A stretch of DNA of 64,000 bases, taken from positions 11,718,001-11,782,000 of the forward strand of contig NC_135667.1 of the NCBI RefSeq assembly GCF_964188315.1, in the 5' to 3' direction. Every line of letters begins with the position of its first letter. Position 1 is the stretch's first letter. Below are positions 1,048 to 58,900 of this stretch, piece by piece. Below the pieces are notes generated by a model. The model did no database searches, was not told the origin of the DNA, and saw only the letters and a list, made by a program, of their open reading frames with translations. A program made the translations under genes and the position numbers. The DNA is from Podarcis muralis. Its lineage: Eukaryota.

Positions 1048-2350
1048 CTAAAGGGAAAGAAAAACACAGACATTTTGGAGTGGTAACAAAGGTCATTATA
1101 TTCTCATTTACATAATTATTTTCATAAAGTTACGATCCTATATATCCCCAATGTTCTTCTATTTAGGATGATGTCCCCTACTTTTTACATTCACACAGTA
1201 GTTTTCCATTCAATATTCACCCCTCCAACATTTGGAGCAACTTTTGGTGAAATTTGGTGAATTGTGGGGGCGATGAGAGGAAAGCCTGATAGTAACAATC
1301 TTCAGTTCCTACCTGTGGACTCTTGTAAAGACCCAGGATATCTGCCATGCAGGAAGAGATGTCAGAACTTAGCCCCCCGATGACTCCTATTACATTTTCC
1401 TGGATGTCACATCTGTAGTTGGGGACAAACTGATGTGATTTAAAGAGCAGGTCCAGAGTGGCACGGTAGGTCATCCCTGCTTTGGCATAGCTGTCATAGA
1501 TGTGGAACCCGAGAGTGATGTTGGGCAAGATCTTGGGATTCTCATTGATCTTGTCAACAGCAAATGCCAAGGACAGGACATGCTGATAGAACTTGGTCAC
1601 CATGCTGCAAATAAAGTCACTTGCTATTTCAGGGGAGAATGAAAACAGTATACTCTGCATCAATTTAGCAGTGTTTGACAAGTCAGCTGCCTAAGTATGG
1701 AGAGAGGGAAGAATCTTCTAAGTTAGTCAAAGTTAGACTGCAATTTTTTAAGCAATGGGGTGGTCAAGAGATTGGTGATATTACAAGTTGTCCATATGTT
1801 TTTGACATCTCATCTGGAAACAATTCCCTCGCAAAGCTGCTTTTAGGGTTGGATCAGAACCTAAAGTAGCCAGAGCCTTCCATTCTCATTTCATCTCTTT
1901 CTGCCACCCAGTTTTCTCTCCCTCTTTCTGCCATCTCTCTTTCCCCTCTCTGAAAATGCCACCTCTCTGAAAACCTGGAGACAATGCACTTAGTTTTGAG
2001 CATTTCATTTTCTGATCAGAAATAGGGTCTTTTCCTGTTTTTCAAAGCAATCAGAGTACATTACAGTCATCCTTAGAATTACAAATATCAGCACAATTAA
2101 AAAGCCTATTTACTTACAATGGGACATCAACCCAGAACTGAGGAGGGTGCTCATTGAAAAGAAGTTTGGGGAAAATGTAATTGATATGAGTTGCTACCCC
2201 ACCAATGAGGAGATCTCCAGACTCGTACCACTCATGCGGAATATACACAGCACTGTTTCTTACACACTTAATAGTATTCACTTTGGATACCATATTTGAG
2301 AGAAGAAGCAGGCAAAGCAGCATCATGACATTAAACTCCCCCCTGAACAT
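181..2350 (-). CDS. Vmn2r: V2R gene A, exons 1-3 (exons 4-6 lie beyond the left edge)
   Basis: Exons 2350-2118 (233 bp), 1604-1313 (292 bp) and 1047-181 (867 bp). All have GT/AG sites, consistent phases and no stops. Motifs include [34 protein letters not shown] and WITTAQ. Confidence 0.93.
1313..1604 (-). CDS. Vmn2r: V2R A exon 2
   Basis: ttgcag|C ATG GTG ACC AAG...CCACAG|gt; 292 bp. Confidence 0.93.
2118..2350 (-). CDS. Vmn2r: V2R A exon 1 (signal peptide and VFT start)
   Basis: MFRGEFNVMMLLCLLLL...GDLLIGG...DVP, followed by a GT donor at 2117. Confidence 0.9.
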
Positions 2351-3490
2351 GGACTGTCCTGTTTCAGGCTACAACTCCATTCTGCTCTCTTCTGCCTGAA
2401 CAAAACATGACAACTTGGGTAATAGCTGAACTCTTCTAATGTACTACTCAGAGAAACATTAATGCACCTTATTCATAACCACAGCAGTGTAACAAAATCA
2501 TGGTTTAAATTTGCATGGTTTGAATGACAATTAAGAGACAGAAACTGAACAATCTATGAAAGGATAGGGTGCTTTTTTAATCAAAATGACAGGGCCCCAT
2601 TTCTCTGTCCCCCCCCCTCTCTCATATCTCTAATCTTAGCAGTTTATGGATTTCTGGAGTACTTAAAACCATTTTTGACTTGAATTCTTTCCTTTCACAC
2701 ACACACATTGGAGCTTTCATCTTCTTGTGATTTCAATTATAGTGTTTTAGATAATTACAGAGAAGATAATCACTTCTGCAATGCATTGGACTGCTGAAAA
2801 TATGTTTGTATAACTACTGCAGAAAACATATTTCTCATACCATAGAATGTATGACTAGACCTCCAACTGTCATTTGGGCCAATGCAAGGTGGTCCACATC
2901 TACTAAAACTCAAAAGTTGGACATCTGCTTTAAAATTCGTCTGTTTAAAATCCTCACTGGTGAGCATATCAGACCCCACCCTATGTAAAGCTAAAGCATC
3001 CTTTTTAAAAATAGAAAATGAAGCATAAATCTATAACACTTAGATTCAGATATAATATTTATGTTCAGTTTTCAACCACCACACCACTGGTCTATGAGGG
3101 CTTCCAATCTGTCACTATATTTGGATGAGATCCAATCACACACCAGAAAATTCAGGTTATACAATTAATGTTGATATTGTGTGCATCTGCAACAACCCTT
3201 CAACAAAACTGTCCCTCCCCAAATCTGACTTTTTATCATAATAAAAATGATGAAGAAACACATCAGAAAATAATATATGCTTGATGCAATGTTCTCAAAC
3301 AAATCAGGATGAACACTCAATTAACAGGTTGTCCTGAAGTGACCTAACAGGGATATATTTGGTAAGGTATACACCAGAACCCTCATACACATATACCGCA
3401 CACAAGAACCTCAACATACTCTTCTGCAAGAAATAGAATAACTGGTGTGGAGATAATAAAACAACCACAACACATGTCTGAACGTGTGTT

Positions 3491-18945: not shown

Positions 18946-19886
18946 CTGATAGAATAGTTTGTAACTTTCTTTATGTTCTTTTCCTAGATATGCAGATGAA
19001 CTTGTTCTAGATGAATCAAATTGCTTTTTTTAATTTTATTGGATTGTAGAATCATTGCCTATTTGTTTTAGATGCTGTTCTGGCACCTCCACTCTGAAAC
19101 ACTACAGGGATGCCAGTAACCAGTGCAGAAAATGTAGCATTATATGCTCTCAGATTCGAGAAGTTCAAGCTTTGAGAAGTGCAGCAAAGTTAGAGGTTCT
19201 TGCACAAATTCTCATCACAAAGAATTTGTTCACAGGATCTGTGGGGTTATGGAATTCCCATAATGGTGTTGGACTATTAATAAATATTCTAAAAGTATAA
19301 AATTATTATTATTTATCACATTTATATATCACCCTTTATCCAAAGATCACAGGGCAGTTTGCAATATAAAACACAACACTTAAGATAATAACAAACAAAA
19401 TAATAACCCCCATGCCCAGGGGCAACCTTGAAGTTCCCTTCCAACTCTGTGATGTAACAGATTTTCAGCAGGCAATAACATTGCAGAAGTTATTATTTCC
19501 CCTGCAATTATCTAAACCAGTATAATCAATTCAATTGACCAAAGCTCCAGTGGCTTCACAGAAGGGGGAAACATTCAGTTGGAAAGTCTGAAATGTTTAT
19601 AAGTTCCCCAGTATTCCATAGACAGCTAAGATTAGGGAATAGAGAGAGTTAGGGCTGTGTCATTTTGACCAGATTCTCACTTTCAGTGTAGAGCTCAACT
19701 TTCAAATTTATGTAGTTTAATTGGCATTCAAGGTATGCTTTTGTGATATTGTTGAGGTTAAGGTTAAGGTGGATAGGAGTCCCTTTGAGTAGTGTGTTGG
19801 CAGAGTCAGCTGCTAATAAAGTCATCTTGCTCAAATGAGGTCAATAGTTCTAATGATATGGTAAACTGAGAGACGTGGGAGATTTC

Positions 19887-20119
19887 ATGTGTGGACAGAA
19901 GGTTACTATTAGGATGGTGATTTTTCTCCTTCTGCTTCCAAACATGGTGTGCAAAGTGCATAGTATTAGCTGCAGCAGAAAGAAACCTGTACGTGTTCCA
20001 CATGACTGGTATGAGCCAGGTGATCTTCTCATTGGTGGGATGACAACTCTTATGCATTACGTTTTCTCTAAAGTTTTATTCACGGAGCAACCTTCCCCAG
20101 AACTGATTCAGGACCCTTT
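19887..20119 (+). CDS. Vmn2r: V2R C exon 1
   Basis: [19 protein letters not shown]...PGDLLIGG...DP TT|gtaag. Confidence 0.9.
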
Positions 20120-35657: not shown

Positions 35658-36541
35658 CTTCCAGGGCTCCAGATGATGAAGAGAGAATCTACCCACAGTC
35701 TCCTTTTTTCTCATGTTCATTCTAGCTGAGTATGTGATGTGCAAGGCATGTGCTAGAGCATGGACAGAATTATAGATACTGTAGCTGTGGCCAGCCATGC
35801 TCATTTCAAAAAATGATGAGGGAAGGCTTGTCAGCATCTCATCCCCACTACATGGCTTATCAGCAAGAAACACAGTGTGGTTTGAAAGAGAGCAACTGAA
35901 TGCTTGTTCCCAGAAATCATTGATAAAACCATCTTCACTTGCCCATGAAGGATTTACGATGGAAAGAAAATTGTTGAAGTTTTGCAACTCTGTTGTGTGA
36001 ATTGTGAAGGAGATAGCACCATGGAATTTTTGTATATCGGGATCAAGCGCCCTGTGCAAAGTATGCAATGTGAAATCAATTTGGGCTGTCGTAATCCACA
36101 CCTTTGTTGTGGATAATCTTTGTATTGAGGAAATATTCGTTGAATTATTTTGGCTGCTGCTAAACTGTTCTTCACCCATTCAAGGGCTTGATTTTCTCCA
36201 TATACAATAACAGCCTTGGCTTTGTTCTTCAGGAAAGGTGGTTCAACTATTCGTACGTCAGCAAGCATTTTCAGCATGTCATCAGAGAAATGCACATTTT
36301 TTACGCTTCTTTCTGTGAACACTGAACAGATTCCATTCTGGAAAAGCATTGGTTCTATAGTTTGCAAAAAATATTCTCCACCCTCATCATCTGTTGCAAT
36401 AAGACCTACCCATGTCCATTTGAAATACACAAGTAATTGGATAATTCCTTTACACTGGAGACGGTCATTGGGAACCATGCGGTAAAAGGAAGAGAATTTG
36501 AATTGATCATTGACTGATAATTCAAATGAGCCATAGGAAAT
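35658..36541 (-). pseudogene. Vmn2r: V2R D exon 3 (frameshifted)
   Basis: Homology switches from ORF 35954-36478 to ORF 35592-36179 at [16 protein letters not shown]. Confidence 0.92.
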
Positions 36542-39250: not shown

Positions 39251-39483
39251 AAGGGGAGTTTAATTGACTCCTGAGAAGGATGCATGTTGAACAAAAAGCT
39301 GGGAAATACATAATCGATATGAGATACTATCCCACCGAGGGCAAGATCACCAGGGTCGTGCCACGCATGTGGAACATGTACAGAATCAGTTGTGGAGCAC
39401 TTAACACAGTCCACATTGCAAACCATGTTTGGGAGCAGCAGCAACATGTTGATGAGAAAGCTCCCTCTACTTCTGGTCTCCAT
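39251..39483 (-). pseudogene. Vmn2r: V2R D exon 1
   Basis: METRSRGSFLINMLLLLPN...PGDLALGG...LP TT|gtaag; 233 bp. Confidence 0.88.
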
Positions 39484-40049
39484 GGTGCACCTTTTTCTCA
39501 TCCCAATTGCATGAAGCCTGATTGGATGAAACGTGGTGTCAGAAGTGGCTCTCAGGCTGTTCCATATGTTCCTCTCTGAGGTCTGTATGGGGCCATCTGG
39601 CCTGGCTGATTTCTCAGGCATTTGTGAACTGTATATTCTGCTGGGAAACACCTGTGCATTTGAACTATATGGCTTAGGAGGCAGCTGATGCTGTCTCCTG
39701 AAGGAAATAATTCTCTGCTTTGTCTTTGACCACAACAGCATTACAGAAGCATTCATTGAATGGGAACTGAGAGCTACCCTTTGATGTTTGATAATGAAAG
39801 AGCAAAACTCGTCAAAAGGACAGAGCCCACCTTTCTTCCCTCCCTAATCTTAGATGACTAAAGAACACTGGGGCACATATTATTTCAGACTTGCTTCTTG
39901 ATTCCCCCTGCTCCCAACAGCCTCCTGAAGGTGAATTGATAACAGTTATTCTGATAATTATAGGGAAGGCAAACATTTCTACAATTATATCCTCTGAACA
40001 GCCTCTGAAAAAGCTTCTGAAAATTAATTGCTGCCCAAACCATGTTTCT

Positions 40050-40410
40050 TCACTAATTATGTATTTTCCTTTTCTGCTGAATTAAGTTTGAACAAAGGAG
40101 AGTCAAACAATGCAAAAGACAAGTATGCCCAAGTTGATATACTTGGTGTCATTAAAAAGCTCTGGCAACTTCCTGGTTGGGAAGGCCACAGTGAAGCTAA
40201 AATATAACCCTAAAATAGAACAAAACATAGTGAATGACCCTTCATTATATTACAGTACAACTTATTAAGTCACTGAGTATGTTGCCAGACCTGGGAGTAG
40301 AATGAGAGTTTGCCCTAACTGAAATTTTATAGCAGAAAGGAAGAACGGAATAAGCAGTTTTCCCTTGAAGGTTTAATATATTGAGTTGAAAGTGGCATTG
40401 CATAGCCTTT
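40050..40410 (-). pseudogene. Orphan, heavily degraded V2R exon-6 (distal 7TM) relic
   Basis: The minus strand reads VVL*YNEGSFTMFCSILG...[44 protein letters not shown], colinear with exon 6 of B-E. Confidence 0.8.
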
Positions 40411-42649: not shown

Positions 42650-43551
42650 TTATATCTTTTTTCGTATCAGATGTCCTTTATTGTTCAACTCAGGCCTCAC
42701 CACAATAATGTAGCATTTTGGAAAAAATATACAACTCAGTAACCCAGCACTGGAAGTCAAGATGGAGAAGATCTCCACAGCTACCATGTATTTCCCTTGT
42801 GTGCTCAAGTAAGTTGGAATAAAGGAGAGCCAAACACTGCAAAACACCAACATACTGAAGGTGATGAATTTGGCTTCATTAAAACTGTCAGGTAATTTTC
42901 TGGCTAGGAAGGCTACAGTGAAGCTGACAATAGCCAGGAAACCCATGTAGCTTAAGACACAGCAGAACATGGTGACTGACCCTTCATTACATAAGAGTAC
43001 AATTTGGTCAAGCATTGTGTGTGAATCTAAATCCGGAAATGGAGGGGAAGTTGCCAACCAAAGAGCACAAATCCCTACTTGAATATGGGAGCAGGATAGA
43101 ATTATGGAAAAAGCCAATTGTTTCCCTATCCATTTCCGCATCCTAGATCCTGGTTTGGTGGCCATGAATGCTAAAACCACAGATACCGTTTTGGCCAAGA
43201 TGCTGGAGATGGACACACAGAATATTATACCAAAAGCAGTTTGTCGGAGAAGGCAAGTCACCTCATTAGGCTTTCCAATGAACATCAAGGTGCAGAGAAA
43301 ACAGAAGAGGAGGGAGATGAGGAGAATGTAGGTGAGGCTTCTGTTGTTAGCTTTGACTATGGCTGTGTCCCGGTGCTTAATGAAGATTCCCAGCACCAGA
43401 ACTGTGATCAGAGATAACAAAAGTGCAAAGAAAGTTGAAAGAATGGCTAAAGTGTCATCAAATGCCAAGAAGTTTGGAATCTTAGGAATGCATTGATCCT
43501 GGCCTTTGTTTGGATATTGGTCTTCTGGACAACTGACACAAGTTTCTTCAT
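42650..43551 (-). CDS. Vmn2r: V2R E exon 6 (7TM; open in its own frame)
   Basis: cag|AT GAA GAA ACT TGT...RKKI*; 902 bp. Confidence 0.92.
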
Positions 43552-44198
43552 CTGAAAAGGAATGTAAGGCATTGTTCGTTGTTCAAGCTTTAGAACTGCC
43601 TTCAAGAAGCCCACCTTGTGTTTTTGCCCATGACATGTTTAAAATTCTTCTGCCCAACGTGCATCAAACAGAAATGTCATGTATCACATCTGGATTGAAA
43701 TTTGGTTTTCTCCTGATGTTCAAAAAAGTTTTTCTTAAAATAAGAAGTTCTGTTCAGTGAAATGAGACAACCATTCTAGCTGTATTTCAAAATCTTAGGA
43801 GTCAACAAAGGTGTTAGTCATTTTGACCTCTGTCCAAATCAAAACTGCTGATAGCTTTGTGTTATTTCAGTCTGCCATCTCCTGGTGTTTTATTTCTGGG
43901 GCATTATATAATTCATGGGCATCCAGTCTGACTTTCAGAGCTCTAATATTGCAGTTATCTGGGAACTTGGCACTAGGCATTACTCATTCTTCTAAAAACA
44001 TTGTCCTTAAAATAATTTAAAGCAATTATAAGTAAACAGCCAATGGAAAGGTATCTATATAAAAATGAGGACTATGCTTAATTTGATAATTATAAAAAAA
44101 ACACAAAACATTTTGTGAATGTTAAAAAATATGCACAAAGTAAAAGCCAACAGCGTTATAAAAGGGCTCCTCACTTTTTACTTCAACAAATACAGATA

Positions 44199-44429
44199 CA
44201 GTGGTATCTCTGGTTACAAACTTAATTCGTTCCGGCGGTCCATTCTTAACATGAAACCGCTCTTAACCTGAGGTGTGCTTTGCTAATGGGGCCTCTTGCT
44301 GCCACTGTGCCGACTTCCGCTCGCATCCCGGGGCAAAGTTCACTACCAGGAGCATCTACTTCCGGGTTAGTGGAGCTCGCTGCCCGAAGTGTTTATAAGG
44401 GGGATGGTACGTAACCCGAGGTTCCACTG
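44199..44429. mobile_element. Tigger/pogo-like MITE
   Basis: TA|CAGTGGTATCTC...GAGGTTCCACTG|TA. Confidence 0.85.
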
Positions 44430-44462
44430 TAGTTTGGTGTACTATAACATTGCATGTCTTAC

Positions 44463-44579
44463 CCTTCTCATTTGAGACCATCCCAGCTGGACATGGAGCA
44501 CAAGAATAGCAGCACCCTCCTCTCTCTTCTTCCCATAACCATGATGGCACTTGTCATTACATACTGATAGGGGTGGCAC
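44463..44579 (-). pseudogene. Vmn2r: V2R E exon 5 (10-bp deletion)
   Basis: [22 protein letters not shown], then the frame shifts; CCYSCAPCPAG continues in another frame. Confidence 0.9.
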
Positions 44580-45132
44580 CTGCCCAAATATATAGGGATG
44601 GTTTAGGGTTAAATAAGGTTTGTGGAATTAATCTTTCATTATCTTATATCAGATTATCTACCAGCAAACAGGAGGGCAAGTGATGCAGAAGGTAAAATCT
44701 GTAAGTACAGTGGGACACATTAAGTGGTAGGAATCTCTGCTCTACTAAGATTCCTGCGTTGCAGGGTGTTGGACTAGATGACCTCAGGTTCCCTTCCAAC
44801 TCTACAATTTTATGATCCTATGATTATATGAAATTATCTTAATTAATAGCCAACTGGAACATAGGGGTTTTCAAAGCTTTTCTGAAGGGCAGCACAGGTG
44901 AAATGCACATTCCTTGGAATGTAGTTCCATAAAGTAGGGGCCATCACCGATAAGGTCCTTTCTCTAGTGACTGATTATTTAGCTAATTTCAATGGTAGGC
45001 CAGAAAACAGAACCTCCAGATCTGAATTCAAAACATAGACCTGCACATGTAGATAAAGGTAGTCCTTAAAATGATGCTTTCTCTTCAATGACATTCTCAT
45101 TAAAACCACTTGTGTTATTTGTCATCACAATA

Positions 45133-45335
45133 TGGTACTCCTTCCAGGGAGCACTCAGGGCTGATTTCCTGAAGAATGGATGCGTTTGATCTTCTTGCAG
45201 TCCATGAGACTCTCAAGAGTCTCCTCCAGTACCATAATTCAAAAGCATCAATTCTTCGGCGGTCAGCCTTCTTTATGGTCCAGCTCCCACTTCCATACAT
45301 CACTACTGGGAAAACCATGGCTTTAACTATACGGT
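45133..45335 (-). mobile_element. BovB/RTE LINE ORF C-terminal fragment
   Basis: MVFPVVMYGSGSWTIKKADRRRIDAFELWYWRRLLRVSWTARRSNASIL. Confidence 0.88.
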
Positions 45336-45511
45336 CATCACAATATAGTATTCCAATAAATTTCAGCTGTAATTATTTATTTTGTAATGCATTCATTCAT
45401 TCCTCCCCCCCTTATATCCCTCGTGCTCCCATTTTGTGTTTTCTTCCTTTTTATTGCCCTTCCACTTTGAGTGGTGATCACCAGCATTGACGCACACAGT
45501 TAATTCCCTAC

Positions 45512-45730
45512 CTGAGTCAAGCCTCTGTGCCATTCAATTCTGTCATTATCAATGGTGAGGTCTTTCCCAAGAGGATCAAGCCTCCCTACTTTAACTCTGA
45601 TGTAAGATTTATTTTGGAATGTGACCAAGTTTGTAATATCAAATCCGGATGCTAATTCTCCATGTTCGTCCAGTGTGATTGCATCTCCAACACTGTTGTT
45701 GAATGAGATTCTCTGCAGGAATGAGTGGAG
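45512..45730 (-). CDS. Vmn2r: V2R E exon 4 (9-bp in-frame deletion)
   Basis: [15 protein letters not shown]...LDPLGKDL...GLTQ|gt; 219 bp. Confidence 0.9.
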
Positions 45731-45935
45731 CTAGGTTGAAAGAGAAGGACAATGAGAAGGTCAGTGTATGTCAAGGAAGGGAAGGAGTTTCAGAAAATGA
45801 AGAAAACAAGAGCTTGACATTAATGTTTTGTAGAGACTTTGTCACATAAGGAATATCTGTTAGTCAAATAATAGATACTGGGTACAGGCCACTGTCCTGC
45901 ACTCAGAAAATGACAATTAAATGAGGAAACATTAC

Positions 45936-46826
45936 CTGCCAGGGCTCCACATTTTGAGGAGACAATATGTCGCTGGCCTCCATTCTATTGTGTTTTGATC
46001 TGGTTGATTTCATGATATTTAAGGCATGTGCCAAAGCATACACAGCGTTATAGATGCTGTAGCTGTGGCCGGTCATGCTCATTTCAAAATAAGTTGCAGG
46101 AAGGCTCTCCAGCATCTCCTCTCCAGTACATCTGCCATGGATTAATGCAGACATAATGGAGTTTGACCATGAACAACCGAATGCTTTTTCCCAGAAATAT
46201 TTGATAAAGCCATCTTCATCAGACCAAGAAGGATTTACATTCTGAAGAAATTCTTGGAAGTCTTGAATTTCCTTTGAATGAATTGTGAAGGAGATGGCAC
46301 CATGGAACATTTGTCTATCCATATTAGTAATTGTCTGATAGCTATATAATGTGAAATCAATTTGGGCTGTTGTAATCCACACTTTTGCTGTAGAAAGCAT
46401 CTTCTTATTTTGAGGAAACAGTATTTGACTTACCTTGATTCCCCCTATAATCCCTCCCAACCATGTAATAGTTCCACTTTCTCCATATATAACAATTGCA
46501 TTGGCGTTGCTCAGCATGAAAGTTGGAAAAATACCCTTTATGTAAGTAAACATTTCTTCTATGTTATCAGAGAAGCGCACATGTGTTTGAGCTCTTTCTA
46601 TGAATGCTGAACATATTCCATTGTGCAAAAGCATAGGCTCCATGGTCTGCAAGAATTGTTCCCCACCTTCATTATCTATCACATACAGCCCGACCCATTT
46701 CCATTTGAAGTGTAGAAGTAACTGGACAATTCCCCTGTACTGGAGGGCTTCACTGGGGACCATGCGGTAAAAGGAATGGAACTTGTTTGGATCATTCATT
46801 GCTGGTTCAAATGAGCCATATGAAAT
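45936..46826 (-). CDS. Vmn2r: V2R E exon 3
   Basis: aag|ISYGSF...EPWQ|gt; 891 bp, open. Confidence 0.93.
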
Positions 46827-47504
46827 CTTTAAGAACAACAGCAACAGATATATTAGGGTCGGAACAGGAGCTAATTATTGGATAAAATGGCAGATGGGAT
46901 TGCCAAATTTCCCAACCCTCTGGATTCCTGCCCCACTTAAAAATAAATAAATTTGCCAAGCATATGTAGCTGAATGCACACAAGTTAAATATGCATAAAT
47001 TGTGGGTCTGCTGTACTGTTTAACACCCCCCCCCCAATTTTGGTAAGCATCATGGTACAACCTTAAAGTATAGATCCCTAAGTGACTTTCACACACTCCA
47101 ACTGAAGACTAACAAATGTATGCTGGCTGAAGTTTTCATGTACTACAGTCTACTTCATAAGATACATGAAATGTTTTTTTAAATGCCGTATGTATCTGAG
47201 AGAGAGAGAGTTGGAAGCAGGAATTGTAACAGGCTGGTCAAAAGATTGTTTGCACTAACCGCCTGGTAAACTCTTTGATATAAAGAATAATTTTAATGAG
47301 CACCCAACATTTAGAAAACTGTTATAATTTATAATGCCTGTTTTTGGAAGTTAGCCTCTTTAAGTTCAACATGACTCACTCTCAAGAAAACGTGTATGTG
47401 ACTGCAGCTGTTTTGTATTGGTTCATGGAGCGTGGCCTTGTCTTTGAGACGGGATGGGACTTGCAATATCCAGTGATTGCCCATTACATGCAATCATGTG
47501 TGTA

Positions 47505-47702
47505 CAGTGGTACCTCGGGTTAAAAACTTAATTTGTTCTGGAGGTCCGTTCTTAACCTGAAGCCAATGGGGCCTCCTCCTGCTGCTGCACTGCCAGAGCA
47601 TGATTTCTGTTCGCATCCTGAAGCAAAGTTTTTAACCTGAGGTACTATTTCTGGGTTAGCGGAGTCTGTAACCTGAAGCATCTGTAACCTGAGGTACCAC
47701 TG
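47505..47702. mobile_element. Tigger/pogo-like MITE
   Basis: TA|CAGTGGTACCTC...GAGGTACCACTG|TA. Confidence 0.9.
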
Positions 47703-47747
47703 TATGTGTGTGTGTGTGTAGAGGGGCAGAGAGAGTGGGGGTGGCAG

Positions 47748-47938
47748 CAGTGGCGTAGCGTGGGGGGTGCAGGGGGGGTGCAGGGGGGGCCGGCCGCACC
47801 GGGCACAACATCTGGGGTTAGGGCAAATCCACAGGTTAGGGGGCGCAAATCCATGGGTTAGGGGGCGCAAATCCACGGGTTAGGGGGCACAAATTACTTG
47901 CCTTGCCCTGGGTGCTGACAACCCACGCTACGCCACTG
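47748..47938. mobile_element. hAT-type MITE with internal 22-bp repeats
   Basis: 17-bp perfect TIR CAGTGGCGTAGCGTGGG with an exact 8-bp TSD GGTGGCAG. Confidence 0.92.
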
Positions 47939-48347
47939 GGTGGCAGTGGACTGGCAGATAAGGCAGTCTCTTTAACCTAAAGAGAAAATCTCTCTAATAG
48001 ACTGACTGAGTGAAAAATCAGTAATTATACAAGTGGGGGTCTTGAGGGTTTGTGGTTCTGGGATTTTTGTGAAGATGCTGTTGTAATTGCCAAAAGCTGA
48101 TAACCCATCTCCTTCTATCACATTTGAAGCAATTCGCCTCTAAATGAATTAAACAAAATTCTTTTACACCCCCACCCATTTCATGCACATTATTTGATAG
48201 ACCCAAAGGCAATTCCACATATTTCAGTTAATTTTACTTTTCGCCATTATGCTTTATGATTCATGGAAACACTGCTGGAAAGAATGGAAAAAGGAATTGT
48301 GGGGGCGATGAGAGGAAAGCCTGATCGTAACAATCTTCAGATCCTAC

Positions 48348-48639
48348 CTGCGGAATCTTGTAAAGACTCAAGATGTCTGCCATGCATGAAGAGGTGTCAG
48401 AACTAAGTCCCCCAATTACTCCTATTACATTTTCCTGAATGCCACATTTGTAGTTAGGGAAAAACTGACGTGATTTAAAGAGTAGGTCCAGAGTGGTGCG
48501 GTAAGTCTTCCTTGAATCAGTATAGCTGTCATAGATGTGGAAGCCAAGGGTGACATTGGGCAAGATCCATGGATTTTCATTGATCTCATCAATGGCAAAA
48601 ACCAGAGCAAGGATGTGCTGGTAGAACTTGGTCACCATG
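48348..48639 (-). CDS. Vmn2r: V2R E exon 2
   Basis: 292 bp, open. Confidence 0.93.
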
Positions 48640-49068
48640 CTGCAAATAAAGTGACTTACTATTTCATGGCAGAATCATACAGTGAACAGTACTGGTCCTT
48701 TCTAGACCAGAGAGATTCAGCAGTCTATTAAGGAGAGGGCACAGCCAGCAAGGTTAGTCATTAGCCAAACCCTTTAGGAAAGAAAGAAAATGCGCTGTGA
48801 TAACCTTTCACTGCATTGTTCCTTTAGACTTGTACACCAGGTAAGGGCTTACCCATACTTACTTTTTGCCTAGCTCTTTCCAGGCATAGATCCACATGTT
48901 CCCCATGTCCAATAATTTTTTTATTTTTTTTTGCCCCAGAGCTTCCCCCATGAACACCCACTTTTTAGTGCTAAATTGGAGAAAAGGTTGATTCAGGGTA
49001 TGCTCTGGAGCAAAATACTATGATGACGATGACGACAACTAATGGTACTTGGACATGGAGCTTTAAAG

Positions 49069-49204
49069 CAGGCATAGGCAAACTTGACCCTCCAGATGTT
49101 TTAGGACTACAACTCCCATCATCCCTAGCTAACAGGACCAGTTGTCAAGGATGATGGGAGTTGTAGTCCCAAAACATCTGGAGGGGCAAATTTGCCTAAG
49201 CCTG
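49069..49204. mobile_element. hAT-type MITE, 136 bp (related to 32172)
   Basis: TIR CAGGCATAGGCAAA/TTTGCCTAAGCCTG with an exact TSD CTTTAAAG. Confidence 0.9.
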
Positions 49205-50184
49205 CTTTAAAGTTTGGTCCATGCCTAGAAAGAGTGGAGGAAGGTTGTAAATGTTTGGATCTGACTTCAGCTCTCATATTTTTAAATGTGTCAGAACACA
49301 TACATTATGGAGACACGGATTCAGAATTGATAAAATATTTTCTGGAACTGCATTTCAGTTTTGGTGGTTTTGTCCAGTTTGTTCTTCATTACTTAAACAG
49401 TTTCAGTTATGCATAACGACTGTTGCTGAAACACTTTGATAATTTTGGGATGCCATTTATTGTCTCATCAATTGATGGAGCATAGTTTAAAAAAGAACAA
49501 CAACACACACAGAATAAATTGGCACAATTCTATTATCGATACGAATTGTCCATAACTTGATCTGCTCTAGAATGCTTTAATCTAAGCATTTCTGTTCCAT
49601 AGTACAACCCTTAAAATGGAGATCACAACAAATAGTATCTGGAAAAATGTGCCATTTTCAAGTAGACTGCAGGAGTAGGGAATGTGTTCCCTTAAGGGTA
49701 ATCTTTGGGTGGACTGGGGTATGGAGGGCCAGAGTCAAAATAATGCAGGATGCACCATTTCCTTCTGCCATCCTGTTTCCTCTCTCTACCACTCGCTTCC
49801 GTCCGTCCGTCCATCCCTCCCTGCCACTGCTTTCACCCACCTCCCTTTCTCCTATTTTTATGGTCAAGGGTAGAGCCAGCCCAATACATTTTGGCACCTG
49901 AGGCAAGCCAGGAAAGAAGGTGGGAGTGAAGAGCTACATTGGGAACAAGTGTGGGTAGAGACCAGCAGCACTTCCTATTCACCAAGAAGCTGTTTTGGTG
50001 GCAGCTTCAAGGGGGGATTGTGAAAGAGGTCGCAAATGCAGCCTCCAAGGAACATATCCCATCTGTCTCTACCATTGTGGCAGCAGCAGCAGAACTGAGC
50101 GATGCATCCCTTGGAGGGCAGATCTGCCGACCCTGTGGATCCTGCCACCTGAGGTGAACACCTCGCCTTGCCTCATGGGACGAA

Positions 50185-50377
50185 GGCCAGTGGTACAGCA
50201 TCCACTTTGCATGCAGAAGGTCCCAGATTCAACCCTTGGCATTTCCAAGTTGGGATGGGAGTGCCCTTTGTCTGAAACCCTGGAGAGCCACTACCACTCA
50301 TTGTATGCAGTGCAGAAAATACCGGGATAGATGGACCATTAGTCTGTCTCAGTATAAGACAACGTCATATGTTCCTC
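50185..50377 (+). mobile_element. SINE (Squam2/MIR-like)
   Basis: tRNA-like head (gtggtacagcat...ggtcccagattcaacc) and an L2-like tail; fragments also near 20860-20975 and 57360-57470. Confidence 0.6.
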
Positions 50378-50727
50378 TTCCTTGTCATGTGCATGAAATT
50401 TGGCTTAGTGCTAAATGGGTCCACCCCTGAATTAGAGAACTATATAGGATAAATATGTTTGGATGGGTGAAAATATGGGCAGACACAGCACCTATGCTAT
50501 AGCCAGGTAGAGAGCTATTCAATCATAGGACATTAATATTTCCACATATCCAATTGCCAGTCGAACCACAGCCCAATTGCAATTGATTGAGCACATCATT
50601 TTCTCATGTTTTCATATTTCTTTAAAAAGTTTACTTTCATTATTTTCCCCAAATTAAAGTAGTACTTAGTGATTCATACAAATATTTTTAAAAAAAAACA
50701 CTAAAAGGGAAAAAAGTGTTTGCTTAC

Positions 50728-50939
50728 ACTGGGTACTTGATAAGGGCATGAGAAGGGTGTTGGTTGAAGAAAATGTTGGAGAGCACTGGGTTTGAGATGT
50801 GAGACAGGATCCCACCAATTAGGAGATCAGCCGAATGGTGCCACTCATGTGGAACATCTTCAGGATTATTTCTGGTGCACTTAATGGTGTGCACATAGCA
50901 CACCATGTTTGGAAGTAGCAGTATCAGAAGCACCAACAT
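50728..50939 (-). CDS. Vmn2r: V2R E exon 1
   Basis: MLVLLILLLPN...DLLIGG...YP GT|gtaag; 212 bp. Confidence 0.88.
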
Positions 50940-51311
50940 CCTGATGACAAACTTCTCTCCACACAAGGAGACTCCTGGTTGAAAGATAGCTTGGGTGGCA
51001 GCAGAATCTGGGAATGTACTTCTCAAATGGACACGTTTCCAACTTATCATTAAACTCAACTGTTTAAAAGTGTATATTGAATTCTAATTGAAAACAGAAT
51101 CTTGAATTTTCCTCTACACAGAGAGAGGGCAGAATGACAAAAATGACAGAGACCTACCTCTCCCCCCCCCCCCAACTTAGCTGTTAATGGAACAAGGGTT
51201 TTACTTATAACCATTTCAGATTTGCTTTTAGTATTTTGTTTTCTTATTCTATTTTGGAAATCTACTGGAGCTTTGAGCAGCTGAATTGATTATAGTGATT
51301 TTGATAATTAT

Positions 51312-54480: not shown

Positions 54481-55664
54481 ACCCTCCAGCTGAGGAAGAC
54501 ATATATTCTACTGGCATTCCATTCCACCTGTTGCCTGAGGCATAAATAATCAGTTTTCTACACATTTCTCACATCCAGGGGTTAGAAAATGCTGTGGGAC
54601 ACCTCAGTCTTTCTCACATGCTTAACTTTGCAGGAGTGATGTATGAACATGACTCAATGTGTTCCAACATCCATTCAGATTTTCTTCTGTTACTTTCTGT
54701 TACACTGCAATTGGTTTGTTTTGGCTTCTGTTTTGTTACATATATATATTAACTTAGCACACAATAGAAACATGTAACTCAACCACCAACAGATATTTAC
54801 AAATATGTTATCTTCCCTGTATGCTTCCTTTCAGAGTTCATGCATTTCTAGATGGGTCGCCTTTTGTGACAAAAACAACACAGAATCAGGGCGTCCCTGG
54901 GCATAAGTGTGCCCACCAGTACCCCATTGGTGACCCATGGCTTAGAAGGCAAAGAATCCTCCAGCAAATTCTAGTCATAAAGAGGACATTTTTTTTGAAT
55001 GCAATTCTCTTATAAGTTCAGGATTCAACTTTTAAAAACAAATGAGTTTCTAGCTCAGATAGGGTTGGATTCTGCTCATTACTAAGAATTTATTGAGAAA
55101 ATTCTCCAGGTTTTGGTGGCTATGGGTTTCCCACAGTGGCAGGTCTCTTGGACCAGATGAACTCTGAGTTCCCTTCCAACTCTAAGATATATAAAAAAAT
55201 GTTTGCTTCAGCAGTGTTGAAGCAAACATATTTTCAGCAGGATAAAACACTGCACAATTTATTACCTTCCTTGTATTATCAAAATCATTATAATTAGTTC
55301 AAGTGATCAAAGCCCCAGTGGCTTCACAGAAGGTAGTAGGAAGAAAAAAAATAACTTGAAAGTCTGAATTGATTATAAACACCCCAGTGTTCCATAAACA
55401 GCTAAGATTAAGAACTAGGGAGAGGCAGAACTCTATGATTTGATCTGTTTCCCTCTTTTGTTGTAGTGCTGAAGTTTCAAATTGTTGTATCTTTATTGTC
55501 ATTCAGTGTATGCTTTTGTGATATTGTTGCGGTTAAGGATAAGGGGTGGGGTAGATGTCCCTTTGAGTAGAGTGTTGGCAGAGCCAGCTGCCACTCAAAC
55601 CATCTTGCACAGATCAGGTCAATAGCAGTAATAATATGGTAAACTGAGAGACGTGGGAGATTTC

Positions 55665-55897
55665 ATGTGTGGATGGAAGCTTGCCATCAGGATGGTGATT
55701 TTTCTTCTTTTGCTTCCAAACATGGTGTGCAAAGTGCATAGTATTAGCTGCAACAGAAAGAAACCTTTGCATGTTCCAAATGAGTGGTATAAGCCAGGTG
55801 ATCTCCTCATTGGTGGGATGACATCTTTTATCCATTACATTTTCCCTGAAATGTCATTTGAAGAGCAACCATCCCCAGTACTGATTGAAGACCCTTT
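55665..55897 (+). CDS. Vmn2r: V2R F exon 1
   Basis: [19 protein letters not shown]...PGDLLIGG; 233 bp. Confidence 0.9.
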
Positions 55898-55968: not shown

Positions 55969-58900
55969 TGTTTTATGTTTCTATAGTTGACTGCCTCTAT
56001 GAATTCATGTTTCCTTGATTTCTTTGAAAAAGACGACACACAGCTCCCATTATCTGCCTGCTCTCTGTGTAAATTCACTGATTCGAATGTAAAGAATTAT
56101 GTCCAAACTTCTCTATACACTCTGCAGATTCAAATATCTGAACAGCCAGCATTTGCCCCCTTCCTTCCTTCCTTCCTTCCTTCCTTCCTTCCTTCCTTCT
56201 TTCCCTCCTTCCTTCCTCTTTGCTGGCTGACGGCAGCCTTTTTCAGGTAGAAAACCATGCAAGAAGGGAGGGAGCAAGATCAGATGAATGACAGAGCGGG
56301 AGAGTGCATAGCATTAGCTGCACCAGAAAGAAGCCTGTATGTGTTGCACATGAGTGGTAGGAGCCAGGTGATCTCATTGGTGGGATGACATATTTTATCT
56401 GTTACATTTTACCTGAAGTTTTATTCATGAAGCAACCTTGCCGAGAACTGATTATCTCACCTTTAGAGGAACCTTTAGAGGAACGGTTTCCCTCTATGAA
56501 AGTGTGCTGTGCATGTGTGTTGGGGTGTGAGTGTTTCAATGATTCTTTACATTTATATTATTGGCAACATGTTTCTTTGATTTTAAAGACTATGCTCATA
56601 TTGCCATTTGAACCTTTGGGAACATCAACCTATTGTAATTCAATTTGAGCAGAAATTCAAGATCTGAAGCATTCTATCATATTATCTTTATCTGCAGGAA
56701 AGATATACTTTGCATTGGAAAAGACAGCCCTTAAGTCCCTTGATTTATTTCATAATTATATTCACTTTTAAAAATAACCAAATGCCAACAGCTACTGGAA
56801 AAAGAATCTGCTATGGGACCAAAAGAAAATCTCATAAAAGCATTCTAGAAGGGAATGGGTTTTCACTTATTCCTTTCTAGAAAGAGAATCTAAGAACCAA
56901 AGCAGCAAAACAGAAAGAAGAAAATTTGTTCTTCTTTTTCATGCTTTCTTTACTAAATGGTCTTCTGGAAAGAAGCCCCCAAGATATGTGAAGAAAAATG
57001 CAGTTTCTTCTCAAACTGCTGCTCAATAGCAGATTCCCACTTGCACATTGGAATTTTCCACTTCTCTCATTTGCAACCTCCCCTCAAAACATGCTCCCAG
57101 AAGGCTAGAGGACTTCCCCTGACCCCAGGGAAGATTTCAAAGGCACACAGAAAGAGGAAAGGAAGGAGAAGTTTCATTGCATAAATGGACCTCCACACGA
57201 ATATTGTTGGATAAATCTACATTGATTTTATTTTGCACTATATGTCCAACATTGCTGAAAAAGGGATATACTAGAGTATAGAAAAGAATTCATTAAAGCG
57301 GGGTTTGTTTTGGGGACCATCTGTGTTACAAAACAGCTTAATAAAGGGATCAGCACTGTCTGTCTATAGGGAACAGCTTGGCACTTGCAGGTAGTGCTGA
57401 CAAAGACCCCACTCTGAAACATTACCAGTTACCAGTGTAGAAAATGCTGAGCTAGATAGGCTGGGCTCAAAACTGGCTTTGAAACTTTAAAAAGGAAGCT
57501 GGCAAAGCTGAACAGATAGGTATGAAGATGATGAAGTTTTAGGATGTTTTGGAAAGTGGCAATGATTCCAAACACAGAATCACACATCTGTGGCGCTGTT
57601 GATGTTCATGGCATAGTTCTTGCCAACCAGACTTACTGAATGATTATGCTGGTTGTGCCCCTTCTTTATAGTTCGACAGCTGCATATCTGAAATCTAGAA
57701 GAAAATGGTATTAAAATAACTATGTACACTGTTTAATTATCCAGTTAATTTATTTGCAGCATGGTGACAAAGCTCTACCAGCATATCCTAGCCTTGGTGT
57801 TCGCTGTTGAAGAGATCAATGAGAATCCCAATATCTTGCCCAATGTCACACTCGGGTTCCACATCTATGACAGCTATTGTGACTCAAAGATGACCTACTG
57901 CAACACTCAGGATCTGATCTTTAACTCTCATAACTTTGTACCCAACTACAAATGTGGCATCCAGGAAAATGTAATTGGAGTCATCGGAGGACTAAGCTAT
58001 GAGACCTCCTCAAACATGGCAGACATCTTAGGTCTTTACAAGATTCCACAGGTAGGATTTGAGTATCCAAACAATGGAAATCTCTCCCTTTCGTGTAGTA
58101 ATTTGAATATTCATGTGCAATAATTTGACTGTTTGGTCGCTTTTCCTTCAGAATTTTGGTGGGGCCTCCTTCTTGAGAAAAGAATGCCTTTTCAAACCAA
58201 AACCTCAGGTTATGTCAGATGCAATCCCTATTGTATTTCTTTGGTGTTTCATTAGGTGGTAGTAATATACTTATGAATTCCACTGCATACTTTTGGTGTT
58301 ACTGTCAGGCTACTGTATGAGTTACTAACTTCCTCACACCCAGATCTTTTTCATGAGTGGCCTTAGGTTTTCAGAGGGGCAAGAGTGCCTCGATTGTTGA
58401 TTGTCTAAAGTCATCAGCACCACTAGGATATTAATTCTTTCCATGAGTGGCTTAGCGAAAACTACTTTGTAGACAAATTAGGAGGTCAGCCAGACCAAAT
58501 TAGAACACAGGTCAGAGGTTCCCATCACTAACCTTGAGATATTAGAGAGTATGTGACAAGGTTTTAAACAATATGAGGAATGCCTCTTTCCATGCTGAAA
58601 TGCCCTCTTCCTTTTTTCTTCTTCCTTTTTAGATTTCATATGGTTCATTTCAACCAGAATTGAATGATCAGTTGAGGTTCCCTTCTTTTTATCGCATGGT
58701 CCCCAATGAAGCCCTTCAGTATCAAGGGATTGTTGAGTTACTTGTGTATTTCAGATGGAAATGGGTAGGTCTGATGGCTATAGATGATGAAGCCGGAGGA
58801 CATTTTTTGCAGACCATAGAGCCGATGCTTCTGCAGAATAAAATCTGTTTAGCATTCATACGTCGAATTGGTACCAATTTGCATACCTATTTTATTGAAC

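What the first reader, a model, noticed from the sequence alone, without database searches (positions are those of the whole stretch)
43447..50939. Gene E predicts an NMD-escaping, ectodomain-only (possibly secreted) V2R
Seen: exons 1-4 are fully open. Exon 5 lacks 10 bp (GAG GG[G GAG AAA TTT] TGC TGC, junction 44515/44514; 117 vs 127 bp). With normal splicing the shifted frame runs AAILVLHVQLGWSQMRR|[34 protein letters not shown] to a TAG at 43449-43447 inside the last exon. The product would be 611 aa: signal peptide plus the entire Venus-flytrap domain, with no 7TM. Established: stops in the terminal exon normally escape EJC-dependent NMD, and isolated class C GPCR VFT domains (mGluR1, CaSR) fold and bind ligand as soluble proteins. 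Inference: this may be a soluble odorant-binding or decoy protein in vomeronasal mucus rather than a dead gene. However, exon 6 is still intact in its own frame, so the simplest reading is a very recent or polymorphic null.
Basis: partly seen in the sequence, partly recalled or inferred. Interest (0 to 1): 0.72.

Follow-up and report, generated by a model that had tools for sequence, protein, structure and literature searches.

The report
Polymorphic null allele of a V2R
One lizard pheromone-receptor (V2R) gene carries a real 10-base frameshifting deletion in this assembly, but other animals carry the undeleted, fully open version, so it is an ordinary young knock-out allele and not a new secreted protein.

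Summary
Gene E is a six-exon V2R on the minus strand. Its exon 5 is 117 bp, against 127 bp in three paralogues in the window. The reference frame gives 611 aa and ends at the TAG at 43449-43447, inside the last exon, while exon 6 is intact in its own frame.

Public reads settle the interpretation. One run of the same organism label (X1) shows the deleted form. Another (X6, a different study) holds a contig of this exact locus with 10 extra letters at the break, and apparently the deleted form too. A run of a closely related organism (X20) holds only the undeleted form. With those 10 letters the gene is a single 880-aa open frame with Venus-flytrap domain, all nine cysteines of the cysteine-rich domain, and a complete 7TM domain.

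The deletion is therefore real, derived and still segregating: a "segregating pseudogene", a well-known state in chemoreceptor families.

The headline idea of a functional secreted ectodomain or decoy has no support. The truncated form is not shared with the related organism. The product keeps only 2 of 9 cysteine-rich-domain cysteines. The one RNA run laid had no reads on any exon, but its tissue is unknown.

Interest is low.

The parts
50728..50939 (-). Exon 1 (212 bp): ATG at 50939-50937, hydrophobic N-terminus (probable signal peptide), donor GTAAGC
   Evidence: paralogous first exons found by tblastn
48348..48639 (-). Exon 2 (292 bp), start of the Venus-flytrap domain
   Evidence: Pfam ANF_receptor E=5.5e-13
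45936..46826 (-). Exon 3 (891 bp), main body of the Venus-flytrap domain; the Cys in GICSAF aligns with residue 236 of the CaSR chain
   Evidence: Pfam ANF_receptor E=2.6e-23; CaSR, mGluR and T1R ectodomain chains
45512..45730 (-). Exon 4 (219 bp; 228 bp in the paralogues, an in-frame difference), end of the Venus-flytrap domain
44463..44579 (-). Exon 5 (117 bp in the reference, 127 bp in paralogues and in the undeleted allele), start of the nine-cysteine domain
   Evidence: the first 22 aa match the start of Pfam NCD3G (19.9 bits, below the cut-off because the piece is short)
44513..44515 (-). Break point of the 10-bp deletion. The undeleted allele has TAAGAAATTT (minus strand) here; one T of microhomology makes 44515/44514 and 44514/44513 equivalent
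   Evidence: gap against paralogues; table 4 ('put in behind 44513: AAAATTTCTT' on the + strand: X1 0 of 39.6, X6 22.7 of 43.9, X20 31.8 of 31.8)
43447..43449 (-). Premature TAG of the deleted allele, 102 nt into the last exon
42650..43551 (-). Exon 6 (902 bp): rest of the nine-cysteine domain plus the complete 7TM domain in its own frame (phase 1), native TAA at 42652-42650
   Evidence: open frame, 299 aa; Pfam 7tm_3 280.7 bits, model positions 1-251 of 251

Best explanation
Gene E is a normal six-exon vomeronasal type-2 receptor (a class C GPCR: Venus-flytrap domain, nine-cysteine domain, 7TM domain) in a tandem V2R cluster. The assembled haplotype carries a young, derived 10-bp deletion in exon 5. 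The deletion shifts the frame after residue 560, adds 51 unrelated residues and stops in exon 6. The deletion still segregates: other animals carry the undeleted allele, which is one 880-aa open frame. So the assembly shows the null allele of a 'segregating pseudogene', arising from ordinary birth-and-death turnover of chemoreceptor genes. Shown here: the lesion, its presence in short-read contigs, the intact allele at the same locus, and the absence of any second lesion. Inferred: a neuron that chooses this allele may make a stable mRNA (the stop is in the last exon) and some truncated protein, but this is a by-product without a selected function.
For: The deletion and the 611-aa frame are confirmed; the X1 contig covering 44403-44757 is identical to the window (0 other letters, 0 gaps), so the deletion is not an assembly slip. 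The X6 contig covering 44403-44774 differs by 1 letter plus the 10 inserted letters and includes intron on both sides, so it is this locus and not a paralogue (paralogues are only about 85% alike in exon 5). At that place X6 has depth 22.7 with the insertion out of 43.9. The X20 contig (another organism label, about 1.3-1.9% divergent here) has the 10 letters at full depth. Putting those 10 letters back gives a 2643-nt frame of 880 aa with one terminal stop and 9 Cys in the cysteine-rich region. Exon 6 still matches the full 7tm_3 model, as expected if the lesion is recent. Three paralogues and the related organism all have 127 bp, so the deletion is the derived state. Neighbouring gene D has its own 4-bp frameshift in exon 3, and a decayed exon-6 fragment lies at 40294-40046, so small-indel pseudogenisation is routine in this cluster. 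Literature: segregating pseudogenes are defined and counted in chemoreceptor families (PMC12703715). Frame-shifting indels in vomeronasal receptor genes differ among mouse strains (PMC3460788). V2R transcripts with premature stops are expressed in corn-snake vomeronasal organ (PMC3590772).
Against: Only three DNA runs could be laid, so the allele frequency is unknown. X1 may be the animal the assembly came from, in which case the deleted form is seen for certain in one individual. In X6 each of the two forms has about the depth of the flanking single contigs, not half of it. Simple heterozygosity is therefore not proven; a local copy-number difference or a pooled sample would also fit. Contigs cannot exclude that X20 also holds the deleted form at low frequency. 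No informative RNA was available, so lack of use of the truncated product is inferred and not shown.
Confidence: 0.85

Rival explanations
1. One reading: the deleted form is a used gene product, a secreted or soluble Venus-flytrap protein acting as a ligand binder or decoy in vomeronasal mucus. It would be made from an mRNA that escapes NMD because the stop lies in the last exon.
For: Exons 1-4 are open and have a hydrophobic N-terminus. The stop is 102 nt inside the last exon. Class C ectodomains have been solved as soluble proteins (1ewk, 2e4u, 5k5s, 5fbh). Premature-stop V2R transcripts are detectable in snake vomeronasal organ (PMC3590772).
Against: The truncation is an allele and not the gene's fixed form: the intact allele occurs under the same organism label and in the related organism. 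Exon 6 shows no decay, so there has been no time for selection to act on a new function. The break lies inside the nine-cysteine domain, so the product keeps 2 of 9 Cys and loses the CC motif. By homology with the CaSR disulfide map (recalled, not tested here), the Cys that aligns with CaSR residue 236 and both remaining domain Cys would lose their partners, which favours retention in the ER. V2Rs are expressed in sparse neurons, one receptor per cell (established knowledge), which is a poor source for a mucus protein. There were no reads on any exon in the RNA run laid, although its tissue is unknown.
Confidence: 0.04
2. The 10-bp gap is an assembly or consensus error and the gene is simply intact.
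For: Indel errors in low-complexity runs (here G and A/T runs) are common in long-read assemblies. Two of three runs show the undeleted form.
Against: The short-read contig of X1 (355 bp, word depth 39.6) reproduces the window exactly across exon 5, with no insertion at 44513. In X6 about half of the depth at that place lacks the insertion. A 10-bp loss is not a typical homopolymer error.
Confidence: 0.03
3. The deleted and undeleted forms are two very recent duplicate copies (a copy-number variant), not alleles of one locus. Animals could then carry both a dead and a live copy.
For: In X6 each form has about the full single-copy depth (22.7 and about 21.2, against flanks of about 23), not half of it (tables 2 and 4).
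Against: X1 and X20 each show a single form at single-copy depth. The window holds no second copy of gene E; the best paralogue is 80% identical in exon 6. Contig word depths are crude, and the tool itself says they are no copy number.
Confidence: 0.07

Closest known systems
Segregating pseudogenes of chemoreceptor families (OR, V1R, T2R and V2R genes that are intact in some alleles and disabled in others)
   Same: There is one disabling lesion in an otherwise intact receptor gene, and the intact allele is present in the same species. The gene belongs to a large tandem family with birth-and-death turnover. The definition and counts are in PMC12703715. Frame-shifting indels in vomeronasal receptor genes differ among mouse strains (PMC3460788).
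   Different: This is a squamate V2R, a multi-exon class C receptor, and not a single-exon OR or V1R. The allele frequency is unknown.
Squamate V2R repertoire with expressed pseudogenes (corn snake vomeronasal transcriptome)
   Same: Squamates have a large V2R family. In corn snake, 39 transcribed V2R contigs had stops before the end of TM7, and one pseudogene was detected in sensory neurons by in situ hybridisation (PMC3590772). A transcript from gene E's deleted allele would therefore be unremarkable.
   Different: The snake data are transcripts without allele information. Here the DNA polymorphism is shown but no transcript.
Soluble class C GPCR ectodomains (mGluR1 ligand-binding region, mGluR3 and CaSR ectodomains)
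   Same: The fold is the same (ANF_receptor; best solved relatives are CaSR and mGluRs). Chains consisting of the Venus-flytrap domain alone, or with the cysteine-rich domain, have been solved as soluble proteins.
   Different: Those are engineered constructs cut at domain borders. Gene E's product breaks inside the cysteine-rich domain, carries 51 unrelated residues and has unpaired cysteines. No natural secreted V2R ectodomain is shown here.

Membership tests
V2R / class C GPCR | Venus-flytrap ligand-binding domain (Pfam ANF_receptor) | tested here: met
   Exon 2 E=5.5e-13 and exon 3 E=2.6e-23; CaSR, mGluR and T1R chains match
V2R / class C GPCR | Nine-cysteine domain (NCD3G) in frame between the Venus-flytrap domain and the 7TM domain | tested here: not met
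   In the reference allele only the first 22 aa (2 of 9 Cys) are in frame. In the undeleted allele all 9 Cys are in frame.
V2R / class C GPCR | 7tm_3 transmembrane domain | tested here: met
   Exon 6 in its own frame scores 280.7 bits over model positions 1-251 of 251. It is out of frame in the reference allele and in frame in the undeleted allele.
V2R / class C GPCR | Six-exon structure shared with neighbouring family members in a tandem cluster | tested here: met
   GT..AG at all five introns. Six V2R genes or gene parts in the window have matching exons.
Segregating pseudogene (polymorphic null allele) | A disabling lesion is present in some chromosomes | tested here: met
   The 10-bp frameshift deletion is in the window and in the X1 contig
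Segregating pseudogene (polymorphic null allele) | An intact allele of the same locus exists in the same species | tested here: met
   The X6 contig (same organism label) covers 44403-44774 with 1 other letter plus the 10 letters and gives an 880-aa open frame. Caveats: labels are coded, and allele versus recent duplicate is not resolved.
Segregating pseudogene (polymorphic null allele) | No further disabling lesions (recent origin) | tested here: met
   All six exons are open in their own frames and the splice sites are canonical
Natural soluble or decoy receptor isoform | The truncated form is fixed or conserved across related taxa | tested here: not met
   The related organism's run X20 shows only the undeleted form, and X6 holds it too
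Natural soluble or decoy receptor isoform | A transcript or protein of the truncated form is present in the relevant tissue | tested here: inconclusive
   RNA run X23 gave no reads on any exon, only on intron repeats. Its tissue is unknown and about 12% of the run was read.
Natural soluble or decoy receptor isoform | Constraint on the ectodomain exons together with decay of the 7TM exon | tested here: not met
   The 7TM exon shows no decay: it is a full-length 7tm_3 match in an open frame. dN/dS could not be measured, because too few differences were listed (3 synonymous and 3 non-synonymous against X20).

The most novel reading that the evidence does not exclude
The deletion allele is kept at appreciable frequency because the truncated protein (Venus-flytrap domain plus stub) does something. 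It might act as a dominant-negative dimer partner for other V2Rs in the neurons that choose it, or as a released ligand binder. That would make this a natural presence/absence polymorphism of a soluble class C ectodomain.
Probability: 0.04. Interest if true: 0.6.

Novelty: new member of a known kind. Interest (0 to 1): 0.15.

Why it matters
Mostly as a caution. A single reference haplotype can show a receptor gene as "broken in an interesting way" when the species still carries the intact gene. For annotation, gene E should be counted as a functional V2R locus with a null allele, not as a fixed pseudogene or a new secreted protein. For chemosensory ecology, it is one candidate for individual differences in vomeronasal repertoire, as in mice, dogs and humans. 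If the deletion allele proved common and selected, it would be a rare natural test of what a free class C ectodomain does, but nothing here points that way.

Tried and rejected
1. Splicing rescue, checked by eye. No alternative GT donor after exon 5 at +1, +4, +7, +10 and so on, and no AG acceptor in exon 6 at -2, -5 and so on, would restore the frame. Skipping exon 5 joins phase 0 to an exon that needs phase 1, so it does not rescue either. Any downstream fix would still leave the CC..C..C motif out of frame.

2. Assembly artefact. Rejected because the X1 short-read contig reproduces the deletion.

3. Contigs from a paralogue mistaken for an allele. Rejected because the X6 and X20 contigs include the flanking introns at 98-99.7% identity, while paralogues are about 85% alike even within exon 5.

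4. RNA evidence. The one bulk RNA run laid gave reads only on interspersed repeats in introns 4 and 5. This is uninformative because the tissue is unknown.

5. dN/dS by region. Not attempted against paralogues, because exon 3 is only about 55-58% identical in protein and synonymous sites would be saturated. Against X20 only six coding differences were listed.

6. The large protein searches were not run. Family membership is clear from Pfam and PDB, and exon-sized queries cannot reach full-length V2Rs under the tool's length rule.

Exons were searched one by one by reference, and the joined frame was computed only in local scripts.
Full report
**What is there.** The window holds a tandem cluster of class C vomeronasal receptor (V2R) genes. 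tblastn with gene E's exon peptides finds five more genes or gene parts, in both orientations. Gene E lies on the minus strand and has six exons, with canonical GT..AG at all five introns:

| Exon | Coordinates | Length (bp) |
|---|---|---|
| 1 | 50939-50728 | 212 |
| 2 | 48639-48348 | 292 |
| 3 | 46826-45936 | 891 |
| 4 | 45730-45512 | 219 |
| 5 | 44579-44463 | 117 |
| 6 | 43551-42650 | 902 |

- Searched exon by exon by reference, exons 2 and 3 match Pfam ANF_receptor, the Venus-flytrap domain.
- The first 22 residues of exon 5 match the start of the nine-cysteine domain NCD3G.
- Exon 6 in its own frame matches the whole 7tm_3 model (280.7 bits, positions 1-251 of 251).
- The nearest solved structures are the calcium-sensing receptor, mGluRs and T1Rs.

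**The observation.**
- Joined locally, the reference frame gives 611 aa ending at the TAG at 43449-43447, 102 nt into exon 6. That is 538 aa from exons 1-4, 22 in-frame residues of exon 5, then 17 + 34 = 51 out-of-frame residues.
- Aligned with exon 5 of paralogues B, C and D, gene E shows a single 10-column gap between GGAGGG and TGCTGC, and nothing else.
- The product keeps only the first two of the nine cysteines of the cysteine-rich domain.

**The decisive result.** Twenty DNA-type runs from six studies hold this stretch. I could lay four runs once.

| Run | Label | Contig over exon 5 | 10 letters behind 44513 |
|---|---|---|---|
| X1 | organism A | 44403-44757, identical to the window | absent (0 of depth 39.6) |
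| X6 | organism A, another study | 44403-44774, 1 other letter | present at depth 22.7 of 43.9 |
| X20 | organism B, about 1.3-1.9% divergent here | 44403-44777, 5 other letters | present at 31.8 of 31.8 |

- The inserted letters are AAAATTTCTT on the + strand.
- The X6 depths suggest that it also holds a form without the insertion.
- All three contigs include intron on both sides of exon 5. They are far closer to the window than any paralogue (about 85% in exon 5), so they are this locus.
- On the minus strand the undeleted form reads GAG GAG GGT AAG AAA TTT TGC TGC (E E G K K F C C).
- With those ten letters the gene is one 2643-nt open frame of 880 aa, with all nine cysteines and the 7TM domain in frame (local script only).

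The deletion is therefore real and not an assembly slip. It is derived, because three paralogues and the related organism all have 127 bp. It is also not fixed.

**What it is.** This is the null allele of a segregating pseudogene. The lack of any second lesion fits a very recent event: every exon is open in its own frame, the splice sites are intact, the 7TM match is full-length, and an upstream block is still shared with genes A, C and F.

The same cluster shows the later stages of the process. Gene D has a 4-bp frameshift in exon 3, and a decayed exon-6 fragment lies at 40294-40046.

The state is well documented in chemoreceptor families:
- PMC12703715 defines segregating pseudogenes and counts 179 among dog OR genes, with a few in V1R and T2R genes.
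- In corn snake, 39 V2R transcripts with premature stops were found in the vomeronasal organ, and one pseudogene was seen in sensory neurons by in situ hybridisation (PMC3590772).

**The secreted-ectodomain idea.**
- *Formal premises.* These are sound. A stop downstream of the last exon junction is not expected to trigger EJC-dependent NMD (established rule). Class C ectodomains have been solved as soluble proteins, for example the 490-residue mGluR1 chain 1ewk and the CaSR ectodomains 5k5s and 5fbh.
- *No positive evidence.* Nothing points to use of the product, and several things point away from it.
- *Not fixed.* The truncation is polymorphic and absent from the related organism.
- *No division of constraint.* Exon 6 shows none of the decay the hypothesis predicts.
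- *Break inside a domain.* The break is inside the cysteine-rich domain, not at a domain border.
- *Unpaired cysteines.* The exon 3 cysteine in GICSAF aligns with residue 236 of the CaSR chain. As I recall the CaSR disulfide map, which I did not test here, that residue and the two remaining domain cysteines pair with cysteines that the frameshift removes. That would leave three unpaired cysteines and favour ER retention.
- *Poor source tissue.* V2Rs are expressed in scattered neurons, one receptor type per cell (established knowledge), which is an unlikely source of a mucus protein.
- *RNA uninformative.* The one RNA run laid had no reads on any exon, only on intron repeats. Its tissue is unknown and only about 12% of the run was read.

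**Open points.**
- Allele frequency is unknown, because only three DNA runs were laid.
- X1 may be the assembled animal.
- In X6 each of the two forms has about the depth of the flanking single contigs, not half of it. A very recent duplicate or a pooled sample is not excluded. The tool itself warns that contig depth is no copy number.

Exons were searched by reference, and the joined frame was computed only in local scripts.
- Earlier notes of this scan call the genome a wall lizard and describe a conserved V2R promoter block. I did not verify the species. I saw the upstream block only in a six-sequence alignment.

**Verdict.** The finding is an ordinary young null allele of a V2R, and the soluble-decoy reading is unsupported. 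Interest is low.

Noticed in passing
window 35658-36541 (minus strand), gene D exon 3: The neighbouring V2R gene D has a 4-bp gap relative to paralogues B, C and E in exon 3, which shifts the frame (884 bp against 891 bp). This is another disabled, or possibly polymorphic, V2R in the same cluster.
   Followed up: partly
window 40046-40294 (minus strand): An isolated, decayed fragment of a V2R 7TM exon (47% identical to gene E's exon 6, with several stops) lies just upstream of gene D's first exon (39253-39456, minus strand), between genes D and E.
   Followed up: partly
window 56304-56462 (+ strand): A second exon-1-like copy (42% identical to gene E's exon 1) lies about 600 bp downstream of gene F's exon 1 (55692-55895). 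It may be a duplicated or alternative first exon.
   Followed up: no
window 45512-45730 (minus strand), gene E exon 4: Gene E's exon 4 is 219 bp against 228 bp in paralogues B, C and F. The 9-bp difference is in frame.
   Followed up: no
window 45048-45335 (intron 4 of gene E); also 44184-44327 and 44760-44903: Interspersed repeats have enormous contig depth in all DNA runs (up to about 2.5 million summed word depth). They were the only places with RNA reads in run X23. The 45115-45318 piece has an open frame resembling part of a retroelement protein.
   Followed up: no
window 50940-51240 (minus strand), with 2327-2627 (-), 19610-19910 (+) and 55388-55688 (+): A block upstream of the first exons of genes E, A, C and F is shared (CTGTCATTT ... 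TAATTG/CAATTA ... CATTCAA ... CAGCTGCCACCCAAG). Gene E keeps it, with the TAATTG-type core apparently inverted (CAATTA). This fits the V2R promoter block described in earlier notes of this scan.
   Followed up: partly
window 45098 and 44093 (introns 4 and 5 of gene E): There are further indel polymorphisms between runs: 11 or 14 letters put in behind 45098 (X6 and X20), and a variable A run at 44093. They could serve as markers to phase the deletion haplotype.
   Followed up: no
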